DNA of 64,000 nt. Origin: Mizuhopecten yessoensis. Lineage: Eukaryota. This document shows positions 2,541-64,000 of this stretch, one piece after another. The notes beneath the pieces are model-generated. The model worked only from the letters and a program-made list of their open reading frames with translations. It ran no database searches and had not been told where the DNA came from. The stretch lies in contig NW_018408744.1 of the NCBI RefSeq assembly GCF_002113885.1, positions 59,965 through 123,964 on the forward strand. Direction: 5' to 3'. A program made the position numbers and the translations under genes. Positions within the stretch are counted from its first letter, which is position 1; every line of letters begins with the position of its first letter.

Positions 2541-3685
2541 GTATAACTGTACGTATAAACAATGGAACCTTGATTTAAAACAGGTTTAAAAATATTGGCG
2601 TCAACAAGGAGGCCTGAAATCCGATTTCAAATTGTTTTGAGGATGTAACATCCTTAAGATTATGGACCTACCAATGTCATTCTCTCCTACTTCCACGTAC
2701 CAATTATTTTGCATAATGCGATGGGTTGGGACAATGGAATTCTATAATTAACTGAGTAAAAATAATCCAGTTTGTTTAGCAACATTTATCCTGGTAAATA
2801 AAACAGTTATGGAACCAGATTATTAAACATTTCATTCGTGTTACAAACTTATTTGTCGATTGCAAAAGCAATATTACAGAAATGCATAGGAAATGGTAAG
2901 AGTAAAAGTATACTATAAACTTACAAAACGAATGGAATGGAATAAGTGGTAAAACTGCTTGATATACTTAATCCACTTAAAAAGTATATATAAATCTAGG
3001 AGGTTTGAAAGACATGGTATGATTTATAAAAAAAAGTGTAATGATTAAATGATAGTTTTGTTCTCCAGTGAGATAAGTAATAACAGTTTTCGTTATTTCC
3101 TCGAAATAAGAATGCTCTGAAACAAATTACCTAAAATGTCAGAGTATAACAAGCAATCCTTTACAAAAAGATGTTCTCCTTACATTCTTGCTCAAATAGT
3201 ACAGCAACGCCGCAAGTAGAGGTGGAGGGTTGCAGTCAATCTCTATGTCATCTACCGCTTCCATATTTAGTGAAATTTGTGTTTGTCTGTTTCTCGCACC
3301 TCAGACAAAGATATCCCAAGTCATACCCCGTGCTAGATTTTTCTATCTCGTCCGATCTGTCTTGCACCTTTACGTGACATTTCGCGGAATTTTTACACTG
3401 CGATGTATTCATCAGCGAGTTAACTGCTTGAAATTAACAATCTGCATTATAAATGATCTGTTTTATTGTTATATGTAGAGTTTTGATGCTGTTAGATATC
3501 TTATGTTGTAGATAAAATATAATCTATACTGTGAAATACATTGTCATCTATGTAAGAACGGACAGCATGTTTACGCGGAAGCATTCAAATGTAGCTTAAG
3601 TAGTGAAGAGATCATTATCATTTGAGGCCCCAGACGGGATACTTGATGTTTTTAGCAAAAAAATATTTTTGATCGAGCTGCAGTC

Positions 3686-3736
3686 TCTGTAACATCCTAA
3701 CCGAGGCTTATGCCTCGGTTGGGATTTTGTTACAGA
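3686..3736. repeat. Fold-back palindrome (hairpin element remnant)
   Basis: tctgtaacatcctaaccgaggc-ttat-gcctcggttgggattttgttacaga; the arms are reverse complements with small mismatches. Confidence 0.75.
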
Positions 3737-5972
3737 ATCTTAACCCTCGACCATAACCCGATCTCGCTCAGTTACAGGTCATATATTTTATTAGTATAGT
3801 GCCGTTGTCTAAAACTCGAATCAGTTGAAGACTCGCTGATTTACCTGTATAAATCCGTACTATTTCTTACACAGAAAAGCAGTCCTTTTACTCGACGTCC
3901 TAACATTGGTCTTCATCACTATCTGTAGTTTACAAGGAGTTATTTCCCTTCCTATAAATACCGCTTTTTGTTTACTCGATGAATATAGGTTGAACAATAT
4001 ACTAAAAATGTTCCGCAAATCTCGTGTGTACCCTGTAAACTGCCGACCTTTTGTATTCCTTTAGGCGTCATAAATATTCTTGATCTCTTCATGTATATTG
4101 AAATATTCCACTTCTTGCTTTTGTATATTCACAGATACACTGTTTAATTATGTTGAATATATTTCTGCCTATGTTTCTTTGCCAAAGGTCTCTGTGTATA
4201 AATGATGACAAGCGTTTGCTCTTTTCTATTTTCCGTAGATATATTTCCATATTCCTTTGCGTTTTTTTTCCTTTGGCATTATTTCTTTATTTGATCTTAA
4301 TTATATATGTACTTTCGTGATTACTGTGTTCTCTTCCTTGTCACACTTCTTTCTCTTCTGAGCTCCTTTTTATACTCTCGTCCTTTTTCTTAATGCTCTG
4401 TGTTGTGCAATAAAGAGGAATACTTCATTTTTTTCATTTTGTGTTTCTTCTTTGTCCAATCAAATTCTCACAGAACTTTATTTGACCCTGTAAAATATAT
4501 TTTGTTGAGGCACTTCATGTATTTTTCAAAATAGCTTAGCATAACAAAGTTGATACATAACCCTTTCTGATGTTGTTCTTAGGTTCGTGAAGTGATGGTT
4601 GGTAACTGGCTATGTTGAATTTCCTCTATTGGGACTTAGTGTAGGGAGTGATCTGTCAACACTTTTGTTGTTGTGTAAAGTTCTACAAACTGCCTTATAA
4701 ACAAACGACAACTCTTTTGTGATGATACAACACTGCAGCGTTTAATGTCACGGATATATAACAGTTGAGCAAGTACAGTATTTATTGTAATTAGGATTTG
4801 CCTTGAGCATTCTCATTCACACAGCCTTTTGTCTCGTCCCAGATTTATATATACACATTTACAAAGTATATATATACGACAATAAACACATCACAAAAAC
4901 TAGACGAAACAGACCTATATAAGTAATACTGTTGTAAAGGCGCATAACAATAACTTATGTATTATAGTATTTGTTTTCTAATTCTAATATATATATATAT
5001 ATATACAAAATATATCACAGATTCCTTGGACGGCGTTTATGTGAGAGGTTACCTCCCTTTCAAGAAGTTACCTCCCTTTCATAGCGAGTATGTTATCTAA
5101 CACATGGTCACACAGTACGACAGTGGTAATAAAACATGATCAGTTGTGTTACAATGATATTAAATGTGTTTTATCACATGAAAACAGACATATTAAAGTA
5201 TGCAAAAACATATAAAATAATTTAAGATCGTAAAACATCTACAAGTTTGTGTCAATGTGGTTATAAGTTTGTGCAGTTCCAATATAAATGTCAAAACGTC
5301 GACGACTTGTTTCATTACCAGACCGTTATTTCCACCACTCAGTTGAAATACGTTTCGTATATTTAATAGGGCAAATCCTCAGTTTCTTATACTTATACAA
5401 ACCTGGAAATACTGTTTCTGTCTTAACTATATGTATGCTTCACATTCATAACTGTGAGAAAAAAACGGCCTGATCAATGATAAATATGTCATTTGATAAC
5501 ATATTTCAATTTATCAATAAATTATAATCTGGACTCACTTTTAAGTCATTTTCAGTTATACCATTCAGAAAATACCCTGTTCATGTTCCAACAATAAAAT
5601 AATGACCTGTAATCTTAAATGATAAGGTAGGGCCTCGATGTAGATTTTTACCTATGAAGGTCAGTAATATTTAGAATATTAAGAACGAATAGTTCACTCT
5701 TATATTTGTCCTGTATGAGAAGGTTAAAGGTCAATCTTGATCAAAAAATATAACACAAATTAACCTCCAGAAACCCAGCCTAAACAAGTCCTGGTCAATC
5801 TTGTGTGATCTTTAATACGAAAATATTAAGTGATCTTCAATGCAAAAATATTCAAACAAGTACAGTGTATAAGTTCCATTTGTTAACAGGACGTTCTTGT
5901 ATCTCTCCTCGAATCAGCAGTAAAGTGTTCATTTTACAAAATGGTTAGATTGTCTCTTGTACTTGTTTGATA

Positions 5973-40241: not shown

Positions 40242-41565
40242 CTTTACGTTTCACTGTTTGAGTCAAGAACACAGTGACACTGCAATAACACCACTTACAG
40301 ATGTTACGAGCCCAACAATACAAAAAGTCTCCAATATGTACTCAGACTAAATCCCATATAACTCTCCTCTCGACTAATGCACTGTTTTGGAGACCGATTC
40401 TTATGAGGGTATGATAAACAAATAGACCAACTGTTAAAATTTCAATTAATTTGTCTGAGTTAGTGTTGTTTGCCCTGGCTTATTTGAGAGTCATTGAGCA
40501 GTGTATAGCAACTGATACTCTGTCAATACACAAAACAACTGGTAAAATAAGCAACTGTCCGCCTACTATTATACTTTTAGGTATATCGTCTGTCAAAGGG
40601 CAAAAAACCTGGATGTACAGTGTATCTTTCTATTAGCCGACTAAACGGCTGAGTAATTACAGGTAAACCATATTCAGGTAAGAATAATACCTTCAGTCAA
40701 CAATGTTTTAATTTCTTGAATAAATCTCACAGTAAAAAAAAAGTTTGAAACGACGACAGTTAAATTTCTGTAATATATTCAAATCTATGTGGTTGGAATT
40801 TTATTGTTGTTGAAAGGCCTATGGCTTCAATCGGGATCGTCTTGTTTAGAATTTAAATGTCTTATTCAAAAGACGTTAAGGACTAAAGCTCTTTATAAAT
40901 GAAGTAAGTTATTCACCAGACAGTGGGGTGTATATTAAGTTGTGGGAGACTCATTGGTAGATGAACTTCACAACACCATAGGAAACCTCAGTATGGTCTA
41001 TACTAGTCACGTTATGTTGTTTACCAGACCCCGTGTGCTATATACTAGACATGTGTGTTATAAACCAGGCCTGTATGTTATATACTAGATCTGTGTCTTA
41101 TATACTAGACCTCTATGTTATATACTAGACCTTTATGTTATATACCAGACCCTGTGTGCTATATACTAGACATGTGTGTTATAAACTAGGCCTGTATGTT
41201 ATATACTAGATCTGTATCTTATATACTAGACCTTTATGTTATATACCAGACCCTGTGTGCTATATACTAGACATGTGTGTTATAAACCAGGCCTGTATGT
41301 TATATACTAGATCTGTATCTTATATATTAGACCTTTATTCTGTATCTTATTCACTATACCCTGTATGTTATATACTAGACATGTACGTTATATACTAGAC
41401 ATGTATGGTATATACTAGACCCCGTATGTTTTCACTATACCCTGTATGTTATATACTAGACTTGAATGTTATATACTAGACCTGTATGTTATATACTAGA
41501 TCTGTATGTAATATACTAGACATGTATGCTACATTGTATACACAATACCCCGTATGTTACATGTA

Positions 41566-41919
41566 TTTATCACATACCTGTTGAATCTTATTATAGTAAT
41601 ACAAGCAATTTCCAGACCATGAAATACAACGTTCTGTATTGCACATGTGCAGCCGGAATAACTTTTTGGTGGAATCCCCTTGTCATGGCCAACTGAAAAG
41701 TTCCCGGTATTTTCAAAAAAAAATCAAAGTTTGTAAAATCTTTGTATCGATCTCTACCAAATACGGAAGGTATGTGATAAAAGCAAGACCACACACTTGT
41801 GTTTTTCTAACGAATCAGAAAGTACTCATTTATTGCGAGAACGTATATATTCACTGTGCGCTCCGCGCACTCGTGAATACTTTCTGATTCGTTAGAAAAA
41901 CACAAGTGTGTGGTCTTGC
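41566..41919. mobile_element. Non-autonomous fold-back element (short IR pair plus terminal palindrome)
   Basis: 14-bp IR tttatcacatacct (41566-41579) / aggtatgtgataaa (41768-41781), then perfect 42-bp arms at 41783-41824 / 41878-41919. Sits inside a minisatellite. Confidence 0.75.
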
Positions 41920-42098
41920 ATATATTCTATACCATGTATGTTATATACAATGTACTAGACACAGTATGTTATAAGACTCCGTATGATACAAATGTATATA
42001 CATGTTCTATATACTGTACAATATACACTAGACTGTGTTATATCTCAGACCTCGTATGATAAATATTATATCATATACAATATACACTAGACCCTGTC

Positions 42099-42496
42099 TA
42101 TTAGATGAAACACATTTCCCCCACATTCTCTGTGTTAGGTTACATTTTCACGTCCAGGTCAGTGGTTTGATATTGACTTGGTATTACCATTTTTTAGAAA
42201 CAGCAGGTTAATGTTCACTTCATGACGACATTTCAATTGTAACGTCATAATGCTCTCTGCTAAATGTAGTACTTTCCTCCGTTTAATTTATATACATTTT
42301 GTACGTTCCAACTTGTTTAATGATAAAAGCATTATTAAGCATCTAATTTAACAATTAAGGACTTTTATTTCGGTGAATATGTCGCTATATGGACATGAGA
42401 AAGAGATATTAACCGAGGCAAAGTCGAAGTCAATATCACTTTCTCATGTTCATGTAACCACATATTCACCTCAATAATAGTCTATAATGTATTAGA
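42099..42496. mobile_element. Non-autonomous fold-back element with a 7-bp flanking direct repeat
   Basis: Imperfect palindrome 42354-42488 centred on ccgaggcaaagtcgaag. Short IR attagatg (42100-42107) / catctaat (42340-42347). tattaga at 42099-42105 and 42490-42496. Confidence 0.7.
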
Positions 42497-43020
42497 CCCT
42501 ATATGTTACATACTAGGCATGTATGCTATTCCCGAGACCCTGTTTGTTGTATACTAGATCCAATAAATAGATGTATGATATTAACGTATCATATCCGATG
42601 ATATTCGTTAACAAAATATAATGACCACATTTTATCATTGTTATCAACCTTATGGTATCTCAATATCAGATCTAATACTACATATGTTTTATAATTGGTT
42701 TACTTAGTGATTCGGTAGAGACAATCAAAAGTAAATCGCTGTTACTGTGAAGAAGTTTAAAATTTCGATAATCATTTTTGTATTAAAATTGAGCCTGATG
42801 TAGTGGCCGAGTGATGATCGAGTTACCAGCTTATAACCCACAGCCATTGTACGGCGCCATATTGAATTACACCAGATAGCATTCAGTGAGTTACCGATAT
42901 ATCAAAAAATCATTTACATGAGTCAGAACATTATTTTATACCAATCAAATTATGAAATTTAATCCAATATTTTTAACGATCCAATGAGTGTATGTATTAT
43001 CAGGGTGGTCGGGTGGTGCA

Positions 43021-43170
43021 GGGTGGTCGGGTGGTGCAGTGGATAGCGCACTTGCCTTTCACCAAGGCGGCCGGGGTTCGATTCCCCGATCGGACGTGAA
43101 AAGGTTGGGGTCACCTGCCCGACCACGTGGGTTTTCTCCGGGCACTCCGGTTTCCTCCCACACTAAGACT
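43021..43170 (+). mobile_element. tRNA-derived V-domain SINE (3'-truncated)
   Basis: Pol III A box tggtgcagtgg (43032-43042), B box ggttcgattcc (43075-43085), and V-SINE core gggttttctccgggcactccggtttcctcccac (43129-43161). Confidence 0.85.
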
Positions 43171-45828
43171 TTAATCAATCTCTAAGGCGAGGACAGCTTG
43201 AACCTAGATAAAGTTCTTGTTCTCAGATGTAACGTTTTATCATCAAACCAATTTTTAAGAGGTTCGAATCCATACAACACATATACATGGAGTTGCTGTA
43301 TAAATCCTTTTATGTGACTTTAATTGTGGTCAAACAATTACTAAAGGTTTAACATTAACGTAACGCTGTTCTCCAACTTAAACCCGTCGGATGTCAGTCG
43401 TTCGTTCAAGCGTGCCATTTGCGGCAGGTTCCGGTATGAACAATGTGTCTACATGACCACATTTCCTGTGTAAAAGGTGTACTTAGCCAGTTAACGCTAG
43501 TCAATATTAGCCGATACAGTGGTCGCTCGCCCATGTAATTCCATAGTAATACCTAATGGACGCGCTGTGTCATTCAAATGGTTCCTTCTCCACAAATATA
43601 TACCGAGTATTGTACTTAACAAATTAACATATCTATTCCCCGTAGTGGTTTGTTTGTCAAACGAGGCGTTCTGAAGCTTTAACCGATATGGGGTGTCTTC
43701 CAGTCAATAGTTGGCAGGCAAATTTGTGACATGTGTAGTGTAGCTAGGCACATCAACGATCGGGAAACATAATGGTTCGGTTTAAATACTGGATTAGGTG
43801 TCAAAATATCGTAAAGGATATTCTTATTACGGCATCTACAGTTCAAAATATTGTGCCAAGCATCCTTGGAATCAAAAAACATTATCTGTCTTGGGTAGGA
43901 TTGGTGCGCCTACTAAGGAAATCTGAGACAAGTAATTTATCTTACCTATAAGAAAAGGATTATTTTTAAATAGAAGCGGAGAGTTTTGAGTGTCGCTTTT
44001 GTCGAGGTTTCTATTGTGTCACCAGTAATACTACACCCATTCAATGTGCAACGGGTAATTGCTTGATATTTCCAACTTTCAATTTGATACATGTACATGT
44101 CATCTGATTCCGTAAATCGATGAAAGTATATTGGTGTAGTGACAACATCATATATTGACATACATTAGTGTGATGGTAATATTGTAGTGACGACAACATC
44201 ATTGTAATCCATGTGATGACATACATCATTACTAGGATTGCTATTAATGATTCGATGGCGTGGAGGACAACGGGATAGTGGTGGAATATATATACCTCAC
44301 TGAAATTAAATGACAATCAAAATAAAATAGGTCGTTTGTTATAGTAGATATACTCTAAAAAGCTGACTATTCCGTGCGTGCTTCCTTTCAATGGGAGGCA
44401 CTTTGCACATCAGGACAGCATAGACAACACGAGGTCATCAACTGGAACGGACTGATCAGCTCAGTGCCATGCATGATTGGCCAAACCCTATACACCAAGT
44501 TCTCCGTTGTATAGCTATAGGTAGATTACACTAATCCACGAGTACGTGAATACACTGTACATAACGTGTAAGTTCTTACTATTACAGGGATTAAAATAAC
44601 GGGCCAACGATGACAGTTCGAAAAAGAATTAAAACTGCCAATACCTCATCTTTTGAATCGTACTGTACGTTTTTATATTATGAGTGTACGCGTTTTCCAT
44701 CTATAAGCAGAGAATGGAGTGTTCGGGTGTTTATTACTCATTAAACATATAGCTAACTACACATGGGACTGAACAACATTTCCTCGCTAGACCTGCCATT
44801 TTGACGAGGAAGCCATCATGAAATAAAACAAGGTTAAGATTTACAGTGTCCCTCATCGCGTCAAACAGACACAGACAATGAGAAAGAAAGGTTGACGTTA
44901 GCGGAGGAAAGGTTTGAACTAGCTAAGGAAAGGTTGGAGCCAGAAGAGGAGGGCTAGAGCTAGCGGAGGAAAGGTTTAGGGAAGGAAAGGTTTGAACTAG
45001 CTAAGGAATGATTGGAGCCAAAGGAGGAAGGTAGATGCCAGAGGAAGAAGGTAGAAGCTAGCAGAGGAAGGTTGGAGGTGGCGCAAAAGAACCGCTACAT
45101 ATGCCTGTGAAAAGAGCAATCTTGGGCATCTACCGGAGCAGTGAATGTATCTGCGATCATATTTGTAACTTACGCGGAACATGGAAACAATAGATCACAG
45201 GACGGCTTACCGAGTGCCTTCGTTTAGTAACTTAATATCATGGCACAGATACAGGACTTCAGTTAATCAAATTACATACAAATGTACTTGGTCAGATTGG
45301 AGGTGAGTTCTGATACACATTGGGTCGATTATTAATTAGCAAAATGAGTGTCTTAATGAAGGAAACACTAATCTTACATACAAATGTCGCGCTGGATATC
45401 TACTCGACAGACAATTCAAACCCATTTTAGACATGCACGGATCCCGATGATCTCTGTGATAACTGGATCTTTAAAACGAATCGAAGTCGGGTTATTTAAA
45501 AACACATGTTCAACAATGTAAAGGAATATATTGGAAATATACCAGTAACACATTTGACATACACGAACAAAACCGAATAGTTTAGTGAATTTACTAACAC
45601 AGGTGTCCTTCTAATTTAAAACCGTCCTCTATTTAGTTTTATCTGACTTGACAGAATACACCTATTTCCATTGGAGTGTGAAAATCTAACCACTGCATAT
45701 ATACCGACTAACACCGTCATATATGTACATATTTAAGAAACACTTGAACGAAAAAACAGATAAAACATTAAAAATTGATATTCGCTTATAAATTTGAATA
45801 AAAAGTTTTTAGAAATGAATTGTCTTAC

Positions 45829-45962
45829 CTGGTTTTGTATAGGTGTAATTTCCCCTGTTTGTCAGGTGTTAGCGACACAACGGTAGCTATAGAGGGCTGA
45901 TCCAGGTAAGGTCTAATTCACGGAGACGCTCGAACAGCATGGCGACGGGTAACCAAGGACGC
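45829..45962 (-). promoter_or_regulatory. Candidate RFX/X-box-rich promoter and non-coding first exon
   Basis: Strong minus-strand donor CCAG|gtaaga at 45829/45828. Clustered X-box-like sites ttagcgac, cacggagac, catggcgac and gtaaccaaggacgc within ~100 bp of CpG-richer DNA. Confidence 0.35.
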
Positions 45963-47200
45963 TAAGGCCACGGACTTAGTCAATAGTCGACTGATTAATA
46001 GAGCCTATTGGAACAATATATACCGGCCCACGATTAGTGTGTTAATCTCATAGGACGAATGCTGTGTGTGCCGGAATCTACTGTGTGTTTAAAACTATTG
46101 CACCCCTTCAAAGTGTAATATACGGTACAGATATCGTTAACCGAAATTGATTTTAAATGTTTGAGCGTTTAAGTTGAGCAATCCGTTACGTTTATCCCCG
46201 TTATGTTCGATCGCGTAACATGTTATCGGAGGTACTTAAGCACAATCTTAAGTTGCTAACGAAGAAAATATGCACTCCTAGACGGCAACGTGGAAAAAAC
46301 AGTCAGTTACTTAATATATCTTCCGTTTACTTTTTCAACTGTAGACTTAGCACCTCGGAATAACCTGTCGCTTGACATTACTGCATTGACTTAAAACATT
46401 CTTTTCAACGTCTGACAATTTTATGGCAGGACACCCATTACAGAAAACTTGCTCCCGGATTTTTACTGCATTGGAAATGAAAAAAGATTAATAGACGTGT
46501 CGCGTGGTGGCTTTAATTGGGAAATTGAAAAAGTTATTTTAGAGTAAACGGTTTACATTTGGATATAGACACAATTATATTGGATAAATGGAGCTTATGC
46601 AAATAATCTCACCATTGACACTGGGGCCGTAAAGATTTTTAAACGTTTCCCCCAAACACAGAAGACATGACCACACCAAGACCAGCTGTACCTATCTGAT
46701 GACACACAGCTTAAGTTTTAAAACGATTTCTTTTCCAGAAAATTACCTCAAATTCAAATATTTTTACTCCTTCTTTCCAGAAAAAGATTTTGTAGAAAAC
46801 ATGAGTGTGTCAATGCATGTACATTGTATTCTACAGAACTGTGTTTAATTGTAGCGGTAAGAACGTCTCTCGGTTAAAGTTTAACACGGCAATTATAACG
46901 GAAACGAATCCTAGATGAGCGTTTTAGCTGGTAATTCTGACGGAAAAAGATTAGATTACCATTTTACCCCGATAAGAACGTATACCTTATCACCTTTTTA
47001 CTCAGTAATTCTGACAGATAAGAAAAATCTTTCATAACCAATTTACCTGGAAATTGTGATTGACAAGAATGTACACAAGGTTACCGTTTTACGCAGTTGT
47101 TTTATTATCATAATAAGAGTTATATACTCTATATGTAAATATTTACGTACTGATATTTGCAATTTAAAAATGAATGTGTACCCCACATCTGTCCACATTA

Positions 47201-47445
47201 GGGCCCGTATTCATGAAACGATTTTCATGCTCAAACTCATGCCCACATTTTGTGCTAAGCCAGACTTTTTGTTCTGGTGAGAAAAACGTTTTTGTATCAA
47301 TGATTTGTAAGAATTTTGGAGACACCTCAACCTGATGACTGTTTTAAATGTTGATCATTTTTTTTCACCGTCACGCGTGATTTGAACGAGTTGCAAGAAA
47401 TAGTTTGAGCACAGAATCCATGCTTGAGCTCATGAATACGTGTCC
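47201..47445. mobile_element. MITE, PIF/Harbinger-like termini
   Basis: gggcccgtattcatga (from 47201) versus tcatgaatacgtgtcc (to 47445), plus an internal tgctcaaact / agtttgagca inversion. Confidence 0.55.
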
Positions 47446-47748
47446 TGGTATATGTATCGAACCGAATCTTGAACATACCAAAGACTTGTCCATCATACTT
47501 GCTCGTGCATTTATAGCAAATATAAACACAGTATTGCTATAGTATAATTAAATACAATACCAGAATTAGTTAAGTACTGTGTCGTAATGAATATAGTCTC
47601 TAGAAATTAATTTAAAAATATATTACTCATACATGTAGAATGTTAAACAAGAATGTTGTGTATGAACGAATCCATATGAGGTATCTTTTGCTTTTTTTTG
47701 GTGTATGCAAAAACGGTTGAAGATACACTTGACTAACCAATATTTAAG

Positions 47749-48987
47749 AAATAATCAACATATATGCGTGTATTATGGAGGAATATATAACGAGGGTGAA
47801 AAAATGTTGGTAATAATAATTAACGAAGGCCACTTCGGTTCGGCCTGAGTTAATTATTTTTCCAATATTTTAGAATCCCGGCCTTCGTTTATTTATTTTT
47901 ACCAACATTTTTTCACCCTCGTTATATATTCCACCATAATGCACGCACATAAGTTGATTATTTTTATTCTACCACGTCAAATGTAACTTATTGTAAAGTT
48001 TTTGCTGTCTTATAAGACGACATGACCTAGATAATTCGATATGCAAATTAGACGCTGTAATTTGCGCGTGCAAGATTTATCACGTGATCGTCATGCCTCG
48101 TTTTAACTTGATCAATGTCGCGCCAACATTTCTCAGTGCGTAGGGTTGGGATTCCCTGATTGTGTTTACTTCTAAAACCATCATCATCGTACCGATACCA
48201 TGCGGATTTTCTTGGAAGTGCCAGTGATACAACCTCATACGATAGGCCTGACATGAGTTGGCATATTTAGTTGGTTGCCATGACGTGATGGAAAGTCGCT
48301 GACCGGCTGATCATGACGCGACCTTCACCTTCACCGACTTCACCGGACAGCTGTGTTTTGCAACCACTGTTCAGACCGATGCTACTCTTTGCAACATTAC
48401 TCTTCATACACGGTATGTACACTGTAGGCGAATGTTCGACATCACTTTGATTTTTTGAAAGCAGACGACGTTTTGCAGACCAGAAACAACTGAACACGTT
48501 TGACGTCAGATACATGTACGATGTTTATTTCAATCAATCAAACATTGGCATGCTATCCACATCGTTCGTCAAAACATGAAATCAACGCTTGACAGTACAT
48601 ACACACACTGCACACATCGTGAAATGTACGGCACTACCCAGTGAAGTAAAAACAGAAGTAATTGATAATTTACCATTTTGTCTTCAGACCTGTACATTTT
48701 AAATGTCAATAATTAAAAAACCAATTTCATTGCACTGACCCACATACTTTAGGTCTATAGATCCGCGTAATCTTTTGTATGTGAGGCCTGTCAAATATTT
48801 TGATCCCGCCTGACAGTTATGCTTTTTTGTTAATTCATGACAAAATACGGGGAGGTTGTTGGAACAGCATGCGTGCGCACTATTTCACGTACATCGGTTA
48901 TTGGCACGCGCATGGTATATCGCTCAATAATGCACTCTTTTTAACCAATGAAAACCGTCGTTACATCACAGACGTGGTAGAATTAAA
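47749..48987. mobile_element. ~1.24 kb fold-back element (terminal palindrome plus short IR pair)
   Basis: ~83-bp arms at 47749-47831 / 47880-47963, then ttttattctaccacgtc (47962-47978), a 16/17 inverted match to gacgtggtagaattaaa (48971-48987). Confidence 0.72.
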
Positions 48988-49667
48988 CGTAGTGCATGTA
49001 TTGGTACGATTTATAGCCACATTATTGTATATACGACTGACAATACATACACACCGTGTGTGGACGCCACGACGTTTGTGTAATCTGTACACATTGATTG
49101 TTGTTCACAAACAAATCCACGTGTGAAAAGGTACACACAAGGTGTTTACGTATTATATTTGTGGCTAATCAAACTTTGTGCAAACAAAAGGTGATCCTTT
49201 CTACTATCGGCAGTTCCGGCGAATTACGGAATTTAACACAGTTTTTGGATGAGCAAGGCTCAAATCGTGGTCAACTTATGTATATTTATTATTACTGTGT
49301 AATCAACTATCAACTACTAAAGGGAGTTGAGAAGAAAGGAAAACTGAACACCAATAAACAGTTATATGTATGAGTTTCTTTGATTTATATATAAGCGTAT
49401 ACCTGTCTATACTATATTAGTAAGGTATAGACTTGGTGACATCCTAGACACGGCTATTTTATTATGTTCATTAAATATGAATGGCATGAGCTTGCGCGCC
49501 GTTATAAATGAAGATTGGAACTATTGTCACGGCACGATTGATCTGGAATCAAATTACTGTCACATCGATTAGCAGGATATTGATGTTTGCGTATCCTTGT
49601 CAACATACGGGCACTTCATATACTACAGAGAAATGTGTCAGTCATTCGTCCTTACTAGCTATACCTT

Positions 49668-50050
49668 GTAAGTCTTGACCCGAAATCAACAGAATGACAA
49701 AAGTCTCAGCCCAGGGGTCATATTATTGACTGTCAAACTCGGGGCTTGCTTCAAGCCAAGGGTTAAACTTTCAAGAATATGTCCCTGACAGTTGAGCTTT
49801 CTCTGTTGATAACCCTTACTGTAGGAAACATTTTTTTCGAATACTAGCACTTATATTTTCCAAAATAATCATAATCAGCATTTAAACGTCCTCAGATTTT
49901 TACTGTAAATGTGACTGCACATACGACGTACTCCATCCCGTCGACAGCTTATGACGTCAAATTCTATTGTTCCCGTAACGTCATCTTATTGTTTGTTTCT
50001 GGTGTTTTATGGTGCCAAGCAGCCAGAGAGCGCACGCGAATGTCAGGAGG
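49668..50050. mobile_element. Degenerate fold-back element inserted after the first unit of a minisatellite
   Basis: Imperfect palindrome 49668-49819 (atcaacaga...ggcttgcttcaagcc...tctgttgat). One orphan array unit at 49648-49668; the array resumes at ~50052. Confidence 0.55.
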
Positions 50051-50051
50051 A

Positions 50052-51830
50052 ATCCTGGTCCTTGTCAGTTATACCTTGTTCCTCATTAGTTATACTTTGG
50101 TCATTACTATAGCCATATCCTGGTCCTTATCTGTTATACATCGGTCCTTACCAGTTATACTTTGGTCCTTACTAGCTATATCCTGGTCCTTACTAGTTTT
50201 AAATCGGTCCTTAACAGTTATACCTTGCTCCTTACTAATTATATCCTTGCTGGTCTTTAACTGTTATACCTTGGTCCTTACCAGTTTTACCTTGGTCCTA
50301 ACTAGCTATATCCTGGTCCTTATCAGTTATACCTTAGTCCTTATTAATTATATCCTGGTCCTTACCTGTTATACCTTGGTCCTTACCAGTTATACATTGG
50401 TCCTAACTAGCTACATCCTGGTCCTTATCAGTTATACCTTGGTCCTTATTAATTATATCCTGGTCCTTACCTGTTATACCTTGGTCCTTACCAGTTATAC
50501 ATTGGTCCTAACTAGCTACATCCTGGTCCTTATCAGTTATACCTTGGTCCTTATTAATTATATCCTGGTCCTTACCTGTTATACCTTGGTCCTTACCAGT
50601 TATACATTGGTCCTAACTAGCTACATCCTGGTCCTTATCAGTTATACCTTGGTCCTTATTAATTATATCCTGGTCCTTACCTGTTATACCTTGGTCCTTA
50701 CCAGTTATACATTGGTCCTAACTAGCTACATCCTGGTCCTTATCAGTTATACTTTGGTCCTTATTAATTATATCCTAGTCTATACCTGTTATACCTTGGT
50801 CCTTACTAACTATATCCTGGTCTTAACCAGTTATTTGGTCCTCAGTATTTGTACCTTGGTCCTTATTAGTTATACATTCGTCCTTACTAATTATATCATA
50901 GTCCTTACCAGTTATACCTTGGTCCTAACTAGCTACAATGTATATCCAAGTCCTTACGCGCAGTACATTGGACCTTACTTATTATACAATTGTCCTTACC
51001 AGTTAAACATTTGTCCTTACCTGTTATACATCGGTCCTTACCTGTTATACATCGGTCCTTACCTGTTATACATCAGTCTTTACTAGCTATATCCTGGTCC
51101 TTATCAGCTATAACTTGGTCATTACTTACTATATCCTGGTCCTTATAAGTTATACATTAGTCCTTACTAATTATATCCTGGTCCTTATTAGTTATACATT
51201 GGTCCTAGCTAGCTACATCCTGGTCCTTATCAGTTATACCTAGGTCCTTACCATTTATACCTTGGTCCTTACTACATGTAATTATATCCTGGTCCTTACC
51301 AGTTATACCTTGGTCCTTACCTGTTATACCTTGGTCCTAACTAACTCTATTCTGGTCCTTACCAGTTATATGTTTGTCCTCAGTAATTAAATACCTGTCC
51401 TAACCAGTTATACCTTGGTCCTTACCAGTTAAACTTTGGTCCTCAGTAATTATATCCTGGTCCTTACCAGTTATACATTGGTCCTTACCAGTTATACCTT
51501 GGTCCTTACCAGTTACACATTGGTCCTTACCAGTTATACCTTGGTCCTTACCAATTATACATCGGTCCTCGCCTGTTATACATCGGTCCTTACCTATTAT
51601 TCTTTTGTCCTCAATAATGATGTCCTAGTCCTTACCAGTTATACCTTGGTCCTTACCTGTTATACCACGGTCTTTACTAATTTTATTCTGGTCCTTACCC
51701 GCTATACCTTGGTCCTTACTAATCATATCCAGGTCCTTGTGTGTAATACCCTGGTCCTTACTACATGTCCACTGTTTTTAAACATTGATTTTTGTTAAAT
51801 TGAGCTTCACTAGCTATATTGTGGTCCTTA
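50052..51830. repeat. 21-bp minisatellite (~80 units) with a 105-bp higher-order repeat
   Basis: Unit ggtccttaccagttatacctt. A five-variant block repeats ~5 times in ~50260-50800. Confidence 0.95.
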
Positions 51831-59819: not shown

Positions 59820-62800
59820 GTGAGGAGACACGATATGGTAGTGAGGTGATAGTATGTTTTGGTAGTGAGGAGAAACGTTATGATAGTGTGGAGACACGTT
59901 ATGGTTGTGAGGTGACAAGTTATGGTAGTGATGTGACACGATATGGTAGTGAGATGATAGTACGTTATGGTATTGTGGTGGCACGTTATGATAGTGTGGA
60001 GACACGTTATGGTTGTGAGGTGACACGTTATTGTAGTGAGGAAACACGTTATGGTAGTGAGGTGACACGATATGGTAGTGATGTGACACGTTATTGTAGT
60101 GAGGTGACACGATATGGTAGTGTGGAGACACGTTATGGTTGTGAGGAGACACGTTATTGTAGTGAAGAGACACGTTATGGTAGTGTGGAGACACGTGATG
60201 GTAGTGTGGTGACACGTTATGGTAGTGATGTGACACGTTATGGTAGTGATGTGACACGTTATGGTTGTGAGGTGACACGTTATTGTAGTGAAGAGACACG
60301 TTATGGTAGTGTGGAGACACGTTATGGTAGTGAGGTGACACGTTATGGTAGTGTGGAGACACGTGATGGTAGTGTGGTGACACGTTATGGTAGTGAGGTG
60401 ACACGTTATGGTAGTGATGTGACACGTTATGATATTGAGGAGACACGTTATGGTAGTGAGGTGACACGTTATGGTAGTGAGATGATGGTACGTTATAATA
60501 TTGAGGAGACACGTTATGGTAGTGTGGAGACACGTTATGGTTGTGAGGTGACACGTTATTGTAGTGAAGAGACACGTTATGATATTGAGGAGACACGTTA
60601 TGGTAGTGTGGAGACACGTTATGGTAGTGTGGAGACACGTTATGGTTGTGAGGTGACACGTTATTGTAGTGGAGAGACACGTTATGATATTGAGGAGACA
60701 CGTTATGGTAGTGAGGTGACACGATATGGTAGTGTGGAGACACGTTATGGTAGTGAGGAGACACGATATGGTAGTGAGGTGACACGTTATGGTAGTGAGA
60801 TGATGGTACGTTATAATAGTAAGGTGACACGTTATGAAAGTGAAGAGACATGTTATGATAGTGAGGAGACATGTTATAATAGTGAGGGGACAATTTATGT
60901 TATAAAGGAGACACGTTATGGTAGCGAGGAGACACGTTTTGGTAGTTAGGAGACAAGTTATGGTAGTGAGGAGACAAGTTATGATAGGCAGGATACATGT
61001 TATGGTAGCGAGGTGACACGTTATGGTTGTGAGGAGACACGTTTTGGTAGTGAGATGACACGTTATGGTAGCGAGGTGACACGTTATGGTTGTGAGGAGA
61101 CACGTTTTGGTAGTGAGATGACATGTTATGGTTGTGAGATGACACGTTATGGTTGTGAGGAGACATGTTTTGGTAGTGAGATGACACGTTATGGTTGTGA
61201 GGAGACATGTTTTGGTAGTGAGGAGACACGTTATGGTAGTGAGGAGACACGTTATGGTAGTGAGAAGACGCGTTATGGTAGTGAGAAGACGCGTTATGGT
61301 AGTGAGATGACACGTTATGGTAGCGAGGTGACACGTTATGGTAGTGAGGAGACACGTTATGGTAGTGAGGAGAGAAGTTTTGGTAGTGAGGAGAGAAGTT
61401 TTGGTTGTGAGATGACACGTTATGGTTGTGNAGTGTGGAGACGCGTTATGGTAGTGAGGAGACACGTTATGGTAGTGAGGAGACACGTTATGGTAGTGAG
61501 GAGAGAAGTTTTGGTAGTGAGGAGAGAAGTTTTGGTTGTGAGATGACACGTTATGGTTGTGAGGAGACATGTTTTGGTAGGGAGATGACACGTTATGGTT
61601 GTGAGGAGACACGTTATGGTTGTGAGGAGACACGTTTTGGTAGTGAGATGACACGTTATGGTAGTGAGATGACACGTTATGGTTGTGAGGAGACATGTTT
61701 TGGTAGTGAGATGACATGTTTTGGTAGCGAGGTGACACGTTATGGTTGTGAGGAGACATGTTTTGGTAGTGAGATGACACGTTATGGTTGTGAGATGACA
61801 TGTTATGGTAGTGAGGAGACAAGTTATGATAGGCAGGATGCATGTTTTGGTAGTGAGATGACACGTTATGGTTGTGAGGAGACACGTTTTGGTAGTGAGA
61901 TGACACGTTATGGTAGTGAGATGACACGTTATGGTAGTGAGATGACACGTTATGGTTGTGAGATGACATGTTATGGTAGTGTGGTGACAAGTTATGATAG
62001 GCAGGATACATGTTATGGTAGCGAGGAGACAAGTTATGGTAGTGAGGAGACACGATATGGTAGTGAGGAGACAAGTTATGGTAGTGAGGAGAGAATTTGG
62101 TAGTGAGAAGACATGTTATGGTGGTAGTGAGGAGAGAAGTTGTGGTTGTGAGATGACACGTTATGGTTGTGCGAGACAAGTTATGATATAAAGGAGCCAC
62201 GTTATGGTAGTTTGGTGACACGTTATCGTAGTGAGGAAACATGTTGCGGTAGTGAGTTGATACAATATGATAGAGAAAAAAGGTGTTATAAAAGCGAAGT
62301 GAAATGTTATGGTTGAGAGAGGACACGTTATGGTTGTGAGGGGGCAAATTATGAAACAAAGGAGAAACAATATGATATTGACGAGACATGTTATGGCAGT
62401 GAGGAGACACGCTATGGTAGTGAGATGACACGTTTTGGTAGTGATAGTGTGGAGACACGTTATGGTTGTGAGGTGACAAGTTATGGTAGTGAGATGACAC
62501 GTTTTGGTAGTGAGATGACAAGTTATGGTAGTGAGATGACACGCTATGGTAGTGAGATTGCACGTTTTGGTAGTCAGATGACACGTTTTGGTAGTGAGGA
62601 GACACGTTTTGGTAGTGGGATGACACGCTATGGTGACACGTTATGGTAGTTAGGTGACACGATATGGTAGTGTGGAGAAACGTGAAGGTAGTGTGGAGAC
62701 CTGTTATGGTAGTGTGGAGACAAGTTATGGTAGTGAGATGACACGCTATGGTAGTGAGGAGACATGTTATGGTAGTGAGATGACACGCTATGGTAGTGAG

Positions 62801-63730
62801 ATGACACGTTTTGGTAGGGAGGAGACACGTTTTGGTAGTGAGATGACAAGTTATGGTAGTGAGATGACACGCTATGGTAGTGAGGAGACACGTTATGGTA
62901 GTGGAGGAGACACGATATGGTAGTGTGGAGACACGTTATGGTAGTGAGGTGACACGTTATGAAAGTGAAGAGACATGTTATGATAGTGAGGAGACATGTT
63001 ATGGTAGTGAGATGACACTATGGTAGCGAGGAGACACGTTTTGTTAGTTAGGAGACAAGTTATGGTAGTGAGGAGAGAAGTTTTGGTTGTGAGATGACAC
63101 ATTATGGTAGTGTGGAGACATGTTATGGGAGTGAGGAGACAAGTTATGGTAGTGAGGAGACAGTTATGGTAGTGAGGAGACAGTTATGGTAGTGAGGAGA
63201 CAAGTTATGATAGTGAGGAGACATGTTATGGTAGTGAGGAGACACGTTATGGTAGTGTGGAGACACGTTATGGTAGTGTGGATACACGTTATGGTAGTGT
63301 GAGATGACACGTTTTGGTATTGAGGAGACACGTTTTGGTAGTGAGATGACATGTTATGGTAGTGTGGTGACACGTTATGGTAGTGAGGTGACACGTTATG
63401 GTAGTGAGGTGACACGTTATGGTAGTGAGATGACAAGCTATGGTAGTGAGGAGACACGATATGGTAGTGTGGAGACACGTTATGGCAGTGTGGAGACACG
63501 TTATGGTAGTGGAGGAGACAAGTTATGATAGTGAGGAGACATGTTATGGTAGCGAGGAGACACGTTATGGTATTGTGAGATGACATGTTATGGTAGGGCG
63601 ATGACACGCTATGGTAGTCAGGCGACACGTTATGGTAGGGAGATGACACGTTATGGTAGTGAGATGACACGTTTTGGTAGTGAGGAGACACGTTATGGTA
63701 GTGGAGGAGACAAGTTATGATAGTGAAAAG
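59820..63730. repeat. 21-bp minisatellite, ~3.9 kb (~185 units)
   Basis: Unit gagacacgttatggtagtgag and variants, with an N at 61431. Generates all the His/Thr/Tyr-rich ORFs on both strands. Confidence 0.96.
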
Positions 63731-63880
63731 AAAGGTACAATGATATAAACAACATTCCATTCGGTTAATTGTTCGTACACTGTACAATGATTTGATCAGA
63801 ATTAAAGTGTCTGTTTGGTTTGTATTGAAGTTTTTGAGTGTTTTGATCATCTCTCTCCAGTTCACCTAAAGACTGGTTTT

Positions 63881-64000
63881 ACAATAAACAAAGATGTGTC
63901 ACGAATCTTGTTGAAGTAAACAATAAACAAAGATGTGTCACGAATCTTGTTGAAGTAAACAATAAACAAAGATGTGTCACGAATCTTGTTGAAGTAAACA
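63881..64000. repeat. 39-bp perfect tandem repeat running off the window end
   Basis: acaataaacaaagatgtgtcacgaatcttgttgaagtaa at 63881, 63920 and 63959. Confidence 0.92.

What the first reader, a model, noticed from the sequence alone, without database searches (positions are those of the whole stretch)
41566..50050. Sequence-unrelated fold-back elements sharing one asymmetric architecture (short IR - body - short IR abutting a terminal palindrome)
Seen: three elements (41566-41919, 42099-42496, 47749-48987) have no obvious primary similarity but the same layout. An 8-17 bp inverted-repeat pair brackets a body, and one copy abuts (within a few bp) a 135-215 bp palindrome that forms one end of the element. 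Two more palindromes of similar style occur at 49668-49819 and 3686-3736. This is not the symmetric TIR layout of DDE MITEs. Established: tyrosine-recombinase DNA transposons (Crypton) lack the canonical TIR+TSD pattern and carry short terminal direct repeats. Inference: these are non-autonomous members of several YR-mobilised (or hairpin/HUH-mobilised) families in which structure, not sequence, is conserved.
Basis: partly seen in the sequence, partly recalled or inferred. Interest (0 to 1): 0.75.

Follow-up and report, generated by a model that had tools for sequence, protein, structure and literature searches.

The report
Rolling-circle-type mini-transposons with long hairpin ends
Three unrelated short repeats here share the end layout of Helitron2/Helentron rolling-circle transposons, not of Cryptons, and stand out only by an unusually long hairpin at one end.

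Summary
E1 (41566-41923, +), E2 (42099-~42489, +) and E3 (47741-48983, reads on the minus strand) are non-coding. Each has about 900-1150 first-look candidates in its own genome. They share no sequence with each other. They share one layout: an 8-14 nt inverted repeat at the 5' tip, and its complement 1-12 nt upstream of a 123-215 nt hairpin that ends 4-8 nt from the 3' tip.

That is the published layout of Helitron2/Helentron (HLE2) elements and their non-autonomous HINE/DINE-1 derivatives (passages of PMC3627910, PMC4067079, PMC11417382). Copies have no target-site duplication and no terminal direct repeats. One head-to-tail tandem junction exists.

The genome encodes HLE2 transposases. One autonomous copy has an 11-nt repeat pair at its mapped ends.

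The Crypton reading is not supported.

Still open:
- No autonomous partner shares these ends.
- The T-T target rule could not be tested.
- The 5' hairpin is absent.
- The 3' hairpin is several times longer than described.

Verdict: a known kind with an unusual hairpin variant. Interest is modest.

The parts
41566..41923 (+). E1, a 358-bp non-autonomous element inserted in a 20-bp minisatellite
   Evidence: Own-genome search: 1007 candidates; the 39 scored long hits are 79-90% identical and mostly span query 7-364. Ends come from 12 copies aligned with flanks.
41566..41579 (+). E1 5' terminal inverted repeat (TTTATCACATACCT), 0 nt from the 5' end
   Evidence: 14/14 complementary to 41768-41781. 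Present with >=10 nt and <=1 mismatch in 12 of 12 copies.
41768..41781 (+). E1 3' subterminal inverted repeat, 1 nt upstream of the hairpin
   Evidence: Lies within 4 nt of the hairpin start in 10 of 12 copies.
41783..41919 (+). E1 3' terminal hairpin (137 nt here, up to about 170 nt in other copies), ending 4 nt from the 3' end
   Evidence: dG -59.6 kcal/mol, z -15.7, 0 of 200 shuffles as good. Conserved across copies.
42099..42489 (+). E2, a ~391-bp non-autonomous element in the same minisatellite
   Evidence: 1149 candidates, 71-78% identity. Ends from aligned copies. 14 of 37 long hits reach the 5' end and 31 of 37 reach within about 20 nt of the 3' end.
42100..42107 (+). E2 5' short inverted repeat (ATTAGATG; 9-10 nt in two other copies)
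   Evidence: 8/8 with 42340-42347. Found in 3 of the 4 copies that keep this 5' end.
42340..42347 (+). E2 3' subterminal inverted repeat, 12 nt upstream of the hairpin
42360..42482 (+). E2 3' terminal hairpin (123 nt), ending about 8 nt from the 3' end
   Evidence: dG -30 kcal/mol, z -7.9, 0 of 200 shuffles as good.
47741..48983 (-). E3, a 1243-bp non-coding element
   Evidence: 894 candidates; the 39 scored long hits other than the window's own are 86-94% identical. Ends from 10 aligned copies. No ORF over 108 aa.
48971..48983 (-). E3 5' terminal inverted repeat (ATTCTACCACGTC on the minus strand), 0 nt from the 5' end
   Evidence: 13-14 nt in 10 of 10 copies, 9 of them perfect. Pair I8.
47966..47978 (-). 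E3 3' subterminal inverted repeat, 2 nt upstream of the hairpin
   Evidence: Lies within 3 nt of the hairpin in 9 of 10 copies.
47749..47963 (-). E3 3' terminal hairpin (215 nt), ending 8 nt from the 3' end
   Evidence: dG -75.8 kcal/mol, z -15.1, 0 of 200 shuffles as good.
3290..3794 (+). E4, a fourth high-copy family with a terminal palindrome (3686-3792) at its right end
   Evidence: >=1191 candidates. Copies span query 141-644 of 3150-3850 and their palindrome self-matches on the opposite strand. No short repeat pair over 7 nt in the window copy.
49685..49810 (.). Degenerate low-copy palindrome, not shown to belong to the same kind
   Evidence: z -3.4. 6 candidates, with 5 weak matches of 45-116 bp.
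40991..42560 (.). 20-bp minisatellite array that hosts E1 and E2
   Evidence: TRF rows 40991-41531. Unit-like sequence resumes after each element.

Best explanation
E1, E2 and E3 are non-autonomous elements of the Helitron2/Helentron group (HLE2), of the kind called HINE or DINE-1-like. They belong to three unrelated families.

Inferred mechanism, taken from what is published for this group:
1. A Rep/helicase (HUH nuclease fused to a Pif1-type helicase), supplied in trans, nicks at the 5' end.
2. It peels off one strand 5'->3'.
3. It recognises the end of the element at a composite signal: the 3' copy of the short inverted repeat followed at once by a hairpin in the displaced single strand.
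4. The single-stranded, probably circular, intermediate is inserted without duplicating the target.

Shown here: the copy number, the exact ends, the conserved repeat-plus-hairpin layout in nearly all copies examined, the absence of duplications, one head-to-tail junction, and the presence in the same genome of HLE2 transposases and of one autonomous HLE2 whose mapped ends carry the same kind of repeat pair.

Inferred only: that a Rep/helicase moves E1-E3. No partner with these ends was found.

The special trait is the very long 3' fold-back of 123-215 nt here and up to about 250 nt in other copies.
For: Layout:
- The 5' repeat lies 0-1 nt from the 5' end. Its complement lies 1-12 nt upstream of a hairpin that ends 4-8 nt from the 3' end.
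- It also matches PMC4067079 (Helentron/HINE: 12-15 bp subterminal repeats, 3' stem-loop after the right repeat) and PMC11417382 (HLE2).

Conservation across copies:
- E1 repeat pair in 12 of 12 copies.
- E3 repeat pair in 10 of 10 copies.
- E2 repeat pair in 3 of the 4 copies that keep the full 5' end.

No target-site duplication: the longest exact flank repeat is 0-3 nt in 22 copies.

Variable runs of T at the E1 5' end (TT to TTTTTT), as described for Helentrons in PMC4067079.

A head-to-tail junction ...GGTCTTGCATAT|TTATCACATACC..., with the second copy cut after about 92 nt. PMC7492417 mentions such tandem arrangements for the Helitron superfamily.

The E2 3' end is more constant than its 5' end: 31 versus 14 of 37 hits reach each end.

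Non-coding: no ORF over 108 aa within or overlapping E1-E3.

The genome has 56 matches to Helitron_like_N. One locus encodes OTU + DUF6570 + Helitron_like_N and PIF1. DUF6570 is the HLE2 marker according to PMC11417382.

Positive control: that autonomous element's ends were mapped independently from its copies. They carry an 11-nt inverted repeat at the 5' tip and 29-39 nt from the 3' tip.
Against: - No autonomous element with E1-E3 ends was found. blastn of E1-E4 against 34 Rep-bearing loci (137,580 bases) gave nothing at E <= 1e-3, and 12-mer hits there are at chance level.
- By my own comparison of the lists, none of the 56 Rep places shares a neighbourhood with any listed E1-E3 hit. The closest on one contig is about 135 kb away.
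- The two autonomous loci whose 3' sides I could read have no long palindrome.
- The 5' hairpin or palindromic 5' repeat described for Helitron2, DINE-1 and mite HINEs is absent: z = 0.41, -0.44 and 0.21.
- The 3' repeat lies about 142-237 nt from the 3' end, against 20-60 nt in the papers.
- The T|T target could not be shown. With the ends as aligned, the flanking bases are mixed: E1 has -1 T5/A4/C1 and +1 A4/G3/T2/C1; E3 has -1 A5/T2/C1/G1 and +1 T5/A3/G1. No empty site was found.
- The copies examined are the best-scoring hits, not a random sample.
Confidence: 0.7

Rival explanations
1. A hairpin-ended transposon class that is separate from Helitron-like elements. An enzyme that recognises a long terminal fold-back next to a short repeat would move it, for example another HUH nuclease or a structure-specific nuclease. 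The resemblance to HLE2 would then be convergent.
For: - No Rep/helicase partner was found.
- The verified autonomous HLE2 of this genome and its derivatives have only short hairpins.
- Four unrelated families share the long fold-back.
- The 5' hairpin is absent.
Against: Every positional feature of the HLE2 end signal is met. The partner search covered only about 138 kb around 30 of 56 Rep places, plus three longer stretches. The families are old (71-94% identity), so a partner may be extinct.
Confidence: 0.13
2. Ordinary cut-and-paste (DDE) MITEs or fold-back elements. In this reading a short-TIR MITE sits next to an independent palindromic MITE, and the composite was then amplified.
For: In isolation, the short repeat pair with the body looks like a 216-bp (E1) or 1019-bp (E3) TIR element. 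Palindromic MITEs are common in animal genomes (my recollection, no call).
Against: - Every scored long copy carries body and palindrome as one unit with common outer ends.
- The outer ends are not inverted repeats of each other.
- There is no target-site duplication around the whole unit.
- There is none around the short-repeat unit either, because its right 'flank' is always the hairpin.
- A head-to-tail junction without spacer exists.
Confidence: 0.07
3. One reading: non-autonomous Crypton-type elements moved by a tyrosine recombinase through a circular intermediate.
For: There is no target-site duplication. A head-to-tail junction could also arise from a circle.
Against: - Cryptons are described as lacking terminal inverted repeats and as carrying short terminal direct repeats (passage in PMC3627910).
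- Here the ends carry conserved inverted repeats and a hairpin.
- No direct repeat over 3 nt links element ends and flanks in 22 copies.
- No recombinase link was sought or found.
Confidence: 0.03

Closest known systems
Helitron2 elements (Bao & Jurka 2013, PMC3627910; passages read)
   Same: Short asymmetric terminal inverted repeats. The 5' one is at the very end and the 3' one is immediately upstream of a 3' hairpin. Non-autonomous derivatives are numerous. The 5' end begins with T in E1 and E2.
   Different: Helitron2 has a second hairpin at the 5' end, not found here. Its 3' repeat lies about 20-30 bp from the 3' end, against about 142-237 bp here because the hairpin is 123-215 nt long.
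Helentron-associated interspersed elements: HINE and DINE-1 (Thomas et al. 2014, PMC4067079; passages read) and oyster Cg_HINE (PMC7492417; passages read)
   Same: - Non-coding and high-copy.
- Subterminal inverted repeats of 11-15 bp, with a palindrome after the right repeat.
- No target-site duplication.
- Variable T runs at the ends (E1).
- Families that share structure but not sequence.
   Different: Published palindromes are short: 5-10 bp in the mite, and a 'short palindromic sequence' in oysters. No central tandem array, microsatellite or 5' IR module is present in E1-E3. The TT target preference was not testable here.
The autonomous HLE2 of this same genome (contig C5567, loci L069/L070), about 9.2 kb
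   Same: An 11-nt inverted repeat at the 5' tip and near the 3' tip. It has many deletion derivatives that keep its ends.
   Different: It has only short hairpins. Its 3' repeat lies 29-39 nt from the end. It has a small 5' palindrome around the 5' repeat. It shares no sequence with E1-E4.
Canonical Helitrons (HLE1)
   Same: Presumed rolling-circle mode, a 3' hairpin and no target-site duplication.
   Different: None of the three has the 5' TC and 3' CTRR ends. Canonical Helitrons also lack the short terminal inverted repeats.
Crypton (tyrosine-recombinase transposons)
   Same: No target-site duplication.
   Different: Cryptons have terminal direct repeats and no inverted repeats. These elements have inverted repeats plus a hairpin and no direct repeats.

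Membership tests
Helitron2/Helentron (HLE2) non-autonomous elements | Short (8-16 nt) inverted repeat whose 5' copy lies 0-4 nt from the 5' end | tested here: met
   E1 14 nt at nt 1. E3 13 nt at nt 1. E2 8 nt at nt 2 (9-10 nt in two other copies)..
Helitron2/Helentron (HLE2) non-autonomous elements | 3' copy of the repeat is subterminal and lies just upstream of a 3' hairpin | tested here: met
   The gap from repeat to hairpin is 1 nt (E1), 2 nt (E3) and 12 nt (E2). It is kept in 10 of 12 E1 copies and 9 of 10 E3 copies.
Helitron2/Helentron (HLE2) non-autonomous elements | [quoted passage not shown] | tested here: not met
   The 3' repeat lies about 142-237 nt from the 3' end, because the hairpin is 123-215 nt in the window copies.
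Helitron2/Helentron (HLE2) non-autonomous elements | 5' hairpin or IR involving the 5' repeat, or a palindromic repeat | tested here: not met
   The first 60 nt fold no better than shuffles: z = 0.41, -0.44 and 0.21.
Helitron2/Helentron (HLE2) non-autonomous elements | No target-site duplication | tested here: met
   The longest exact flank repeat is 0-3 nt in 10 E1, 3 E2 and 9 E3 copies. The 7-bp repeat at E2 in the window is element sequence shared by other copies.
Helitron2/Helentron (HLE2) non-autonomous elements | Insertion between T and T | tested here: inconclusive
   Terminal T's cannot be assigned to element or host without empty sites, and none was found among the held loci. Flank bases are mixed with the ends as aligned. 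The tandem junction has one T fewer than the two ends added together.
Helitron2/Helentron (HLE2) non-autonomous elements | Autonomous partner with the same ends encoding Rep/helicase | tested here: inconclusive
   None among 34 loci (137,580 bases) around Rep matches.
Helitron2/Helentron (HLE2) non-autonomous elements | HLE2-type transposase present in the host genome | tested here: met
   56 Helitron_like_N matches. OTU + DUF6570 + Helitron_like_N and PIF1 ORFs at C5567, with an end repeat pair at its mapped termini.
Crypton | Short terminal direct repeats and no terminal inverted repeats | tested here: not met
   Conserved inverted repeats are present. No direct repeat over 3 nt links ends and flanks.
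Crypton | Long copies encoding a tyrosine recombinase | not tested
   No recombinase search was run. All scored copies are short and non-coding.
DDE MITE / fold-back element | Symmetric inverted repeats at both outer ends, with a target-site duplication of fixed length | tested here: not met
   The outer ends are not complementary, because the palindrome occupies one end only. No duplication.
Canonical Helitron (HLE1) | 5' TC and 3' CTRR ends, insertion between A and T | tested here: not met
   The ends are TTTATC...GCATAT (E1), TATTAG...ATAATG (E2) and ATTCTA...TAAATA (E3).

The most novel reading that the evidence does not exclude
At least four unrelated families, each with roughly 900-1200 first-look candidates, end in a 100-250 nt fold-back placed right after a short repeat that matches the 5' tip. 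The one verified Helitron-like transposase lineage of this genome uses only short hairpins. These families could therefore be moved by a distinct, undescribed lineage of Rep/helicase, or by a different enzyme altogether. Its termination signal would be a long single-strand fold-back. That would make them a new structural subclass of rolling-circle or hairpin-dependent eukaryotic transposons.
Probability: 0.15. Interest if true: 0.6.

Novelty: new variant of a known kind. Interest (0 to 1): 0.35.

Why it matters
It assigns a sizeable and otherwise unclassifiable repeat fraction of this genome to a transposon group by structure alone. That fraction is four families with about 900-1200 first-look candidates each.

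Detection tools for Helitron-like elements expect a short stem-loop close to the 3' end. According to the passage read in PMC11417382, HELIANO looks for 11-18 nt repeat pairs as the outer ends. Tools of that design would probably miss families whose 3' repeat sits 140-240 nt inside a long fold-back.

If the long fold-back is a real requirement of the enzyme, it gives a handle on how these transposases recognise the end of the element. Long perfect hairpins at roughly a thousand sites per family are also potential sources of hairpin RNA and of replication fragility.

Tried and rejected
Partner search:
- I searched the own genome for Helitron_like_N and ran blastn of E1-E4 against the 30 loci returned plus 40 kb around two of them. 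There were no hits at E <= 1e-3.
- Exact 12-mers of the element ends gave five loci with hits in 137,580 bases, which is chance level. One of them lies inside an ORF.
- One apparent 2064-aa open frame (C217) is mostly a run of N. I left it alone.
- 6 kb downstream of a second Rep locus (C4255) has no long palindrome.

Empty sites: I looked for paralogous empty sites by matching left and right flanks of 35 copies against all held sequence. None was found.

SINE or RNA gene reading:
- Rfam gives only sub-threshold matches of the hairpins to plant and animal miRNA-precursor models, 26-62 bits against gathering scores of 73-211. These reflect hairpin shape only.
- The only tRNA-like hit, at 43026-43096, belongs to a separate SINE.

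Coding capacity: no ORF over 108 aa within or overlapping E1-E3. I did not send these ORFs to any protein search.

Literature:
- Four 12-nt strings from the E1 and E3 repeats occur in no relevant paper. The three chance hits are in unrelated papers (listing only).
- A search for Helitron + 'long palindrome' + mollusc + non-autonomous + hairpin found no paper that holds 'long palindrome' (listing only).
- So I know of no printed description of such long hairpins in this group.

Earlier findings of the scan: word searches gave nothing.

Rows dropped before counts:
- For E3 alignments I used the window plus 9 of 11 loci. L034 and L035 were left out because their matches began inside the palindrome.
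- For E2 I used the window plus 7 of 10 loci. L019, L021 and L023 were left out as partial matches.
- For E1 I used all 11 loci.
- In one search, only copies with at least 10 nt of aligned flank on both sides were counted: 10 of 12, 3 of 8 and 9 of 10.

I did not use the look-up of sequencing runs or read laying. These copies are 71-94% identical to their relatives, so an absence allele in reads seemed unlikely.

Full report
**What is there**

The window comes from a 988-Mb genome in 82,659 contigs, with about 31-45% G+C along the window. I did not establish the organism.

- E1 has a perfect 14-nt repeat (41566-41579 / 41768-41781). The second copy abuts a palindrome with arms 41769-41828 / 41874-41933.
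- E3 has a 17-nt, 94% repeat (47962-47978 / 48971-48987). One copy abuts the palindrome 47749-47963.
- E2 has an 8-nt repeat (42100-42107 / 42340-42347), 12 nt from the hairpin 42360-42482.

Folded as single-stranded DNA, the terminal hairpins reach -59.6, -75.8 and -30.0 kcal/mol. Their z-scores are -15.7, -15.1 and -7.9, and none of 200 shuffles folds as well.

E1 and E2 sit 175 bp apart inside one 20-bp minisatellite.

**They are repeats with defined ends**

Each element was searched against its own genome. The first look gave 1007, 1149 and 894 candidates, of which 40 were scored each time.
- E1 copies are 79-90% identical to the window copy.
- E2 copies are 71-78% identical.
- E3 copies are 86-94% identical.

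I aligned the window copy with the fetched copies plus 50 nt of flank. This used 11 loci for E1, 7 of 10 for E2 and 9 of 11 for E3. The resulting ends are:
- E1: (T)TTATCACATACC...GGTCTTGCATAT, 41566-41923.
- E2: (A)TATTAGATGA...GTCCATAATTG, 42099-~42489.
- E3, on the minus strand: ATTCTACCACGTC...TTCTTAAATA, 48983 down to 47741.

The palindrome is therefore at the 3' end of all three once E3 is read on the minus strand.

The three elements, and a fourth family found later, have no sequence in common. The best pairwise match is 16 nt and the lowest E-value is 0.012. No ORF longer than 108 aa lies within or overlaps them.

**The layout is conserved within each family**

| Family | Short repeat pair | Position of the 3' copy |
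|---|---|---|
| E1 | 10-16 nt with <=1 mismatch in 12 of 12 copies; 6 are perfect 14-mers | Ends within 4 nt of the hairpin in 10 of 12 |
| E3 | 13-14 nt in 10 of 10 copies; 9 perfect | Within 3 nt of the hairpin in 9 of 10 |
| E2 | 8-10 nt in 3 of the 4 copies that keep the same 5' end | 12 nt from the hairpin in the window copy |

The other 4 E2 copies have a different or truncated 5' part. Among the 37 long E2 hits, 14 reach the 5' end and 31 come within about 20 nt of the 3' end. Local alignment at 71-78% identity makes this a soft count.

The copies examined are the best-scoring ones, not a random sample.

**What the ends exclude**

In the 22 copies with at least 10 nt of aligned flank on both sides (10 E1, 3 E2, 9 E3), two things hold:
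- The longest exact repeat between the two flanks is 0-3 nt.
- No direct repeat longer than 3 nt links an element end with the opposite flank.

So there is no target-site duplication and no Crypton-style terminal direct repeat.

It is not a duplication. Its left copy is the element's own 5' end, shared by copies elsewhere. Its right copy is minisatellite sequence.

The outer ends are not inverted repeats of each other, so the elements are neither symmetric-TIR MITEs nor fold-back elements. They also lack the 5' TC and 3' CTRR ends of canonical Helitrons.

**What it matches**

I read passages in three papers that describe this asymmetric layout:
- PMC3627910 describes Helitron2 elements. [quoted passage not shown] - PMC4067079 describes Helentrons and their non-autonomous HINE/DINE-1 partners. 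They have 12-15 bp subterminal repeats, a stem-loop after the right repeat, variable T runs at the ends, TT insertion and no duplication.
- PMC11417382 groups both as HLE2. It names T-T insertion and the DUF6570 domain as marks.

PMC7492417 describes the same module structure for oyster Cg_HINE elements.

PMC3627910 also proposes that pairing of the two short repeats in the displaced strand sets the end point of rolling-circle replication.

**Supporting observations for a rolling-circle mode**

- One E1 locus holds a head-to-tail junction with no spacer. It reads ...GGTCTTGCATAT directly followed by TTATCACATACC..., and the second copy stops after about 92 nt.
- The E1 5' end begins with a run of T whose length varies among copies, from TT to TTTTTT. 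This is as described for Helentrons.

**The genome has the enzyme, and a positive control**

Helitron_like_N matches 56 places. At contig C5567, a 1069-aa frame carries OTU, DUF6570 and Helitron_like_N, and a 523-aa frame downstream carries PIF1.

I mapped this element's ends from where its other copies stop matching:
- The 3' end is at about L069:4899-4901.
- The 5' end is at about L070:4086. One search had been swamped by an unrelated repeat.

Before the 5' mapping, a script had found a single 11-nt inverted repeat between the last 140 nt and the 6.7 kb upstream of the ORF. Its 5' copy starts exactly at the mapped 5' boundary. Its 3' copy lies 29-39 nt from the 3' end.

This roughly 9.2-kb element has many deletion derivatives that keep its ends. 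So in this genome, a Rep/helicase element demonstrably uses the short-repeat end signal.

**What does not fit or stays open**

1. No autonomous element shares the ends of E1-E4.
   - There was nothing in 137,580 bases around Rep matches.
   - None of the listed E1-E3 hits lies near a Rep place (my comparison).
2. The two autonomous loci whose 3' sides I read have only short hairpins.
3. The 5' hairpin of Helitron2/DINE-1, or the palindromic repeat of mite HINEs, is absent from E1-E3.
4. The 3' repeat lies about 142-237 nt from the 3' end, not 20-60 nt, because the hairpin is 123-215 nt long. It reaches about 250 nt in one E3 copy.
5. The T-T target rule is untested.
   - No empty site was found among the held sequences.
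   - With the ends as aligned, the flanking bases are mixed.
   - The tandem junction contains one T fewer than the sum of the two ends. This would fit one host-derived T, but it is a single observation.

**The two other palindromes**

- 3686-3736 is part of the 3'-terminal palindrome (3686-3792) of a fourth family, E4 (3290-3794), with at least 1191 candidates. Its window copy has no short repeat pair above 7 nt, so it shares the terminal fold-back but not demonstrably the full layout.
- 49668-49819 is a degenerate hairpin (z = -3.4) with 6 candidates and only weak 45-116 bp matches elsewhere. I do not count it.

**Verdict**

The Crypton interpretation is not supported. The bracketed HUH alternative is the best reading.

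These are most likely non-autonomous Helitron2/Helentron-type elements (confidence 0.7). They are distinguished by a very long 3' fold-back and by having no 5' hairpin.

I found no printed description of such long hairpins in this group (listings only). The library is partial, and supplementary files and curated repeat libraries were out of reach.

The most novel reading still open is a separate transposase lineage or enzyme that needs a long fold-back (probability about 0.15).

Noticed in passing
window 43021-43169: A ~149-bp SINE-like repeat with a tRNA-like head. Rfam tRNA scores 26.4 bits, below the threshold of 29, and ARAGORN calls an odd tRNA at 43026-43096. There are at least 3488 first-look candidates, and all but two of the 39 scored hits elsewhere are 95-99% identical (two are 92% and 94%). 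It looks like a young, very abundant family.
   Followed up: partly
L070:4340-6300 (G000:C5567:859340-861300): A stretch of about 1.96 kb is 100% identical at 39 other places in the genome, out of 1112 candidates. It ends in a short A run and abuts a run of N. It is either a very recent burst of a non-coding, retroposon-like element or an assembly artefact.
   Followed up: partly
L069/L070 (G000:C5567:~849900-859090, minus strand): An autonomous Helitron2/Helentron-type element of about 9.2 kb. It carries OTU, DUF6570, Helitron_like_N and PIF1, split over at least three open frames. It has 11-nt end repeats and many deletion derivatives that keep its ends.
   Followed up: yes
window 3290-3794: A fourth high-copy family (E4, at least 1191 candidates) with a ~107-nt terminal palindrome. 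The window copy shows no clear short repeat pair. Copies fall into two length classes around query positions 511-537.
   Followed up: partly
window 40991-42560 and 50056-50937: Two minisatellite arrays with units of 20 bp and 21 bp. The first hosts both E1 and E2. Whether such arrays are preferred targets, or are themselves the inner repeats of a larger element, was not examined.
   Followed up: no
G000:C73063:200-640 and G000:C82208:1-243: Two small contigs are 100% identical to window 42080-42520 and 3708-3950. They are probably redundant haplotype or assembly fragments.
   Followed up: no
window 60001-64000: GC skew is very strongly positive (0.56-0.62) over the last 4 kb of the window, unlike the rest.
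   Followed up: no
   Followed up: no
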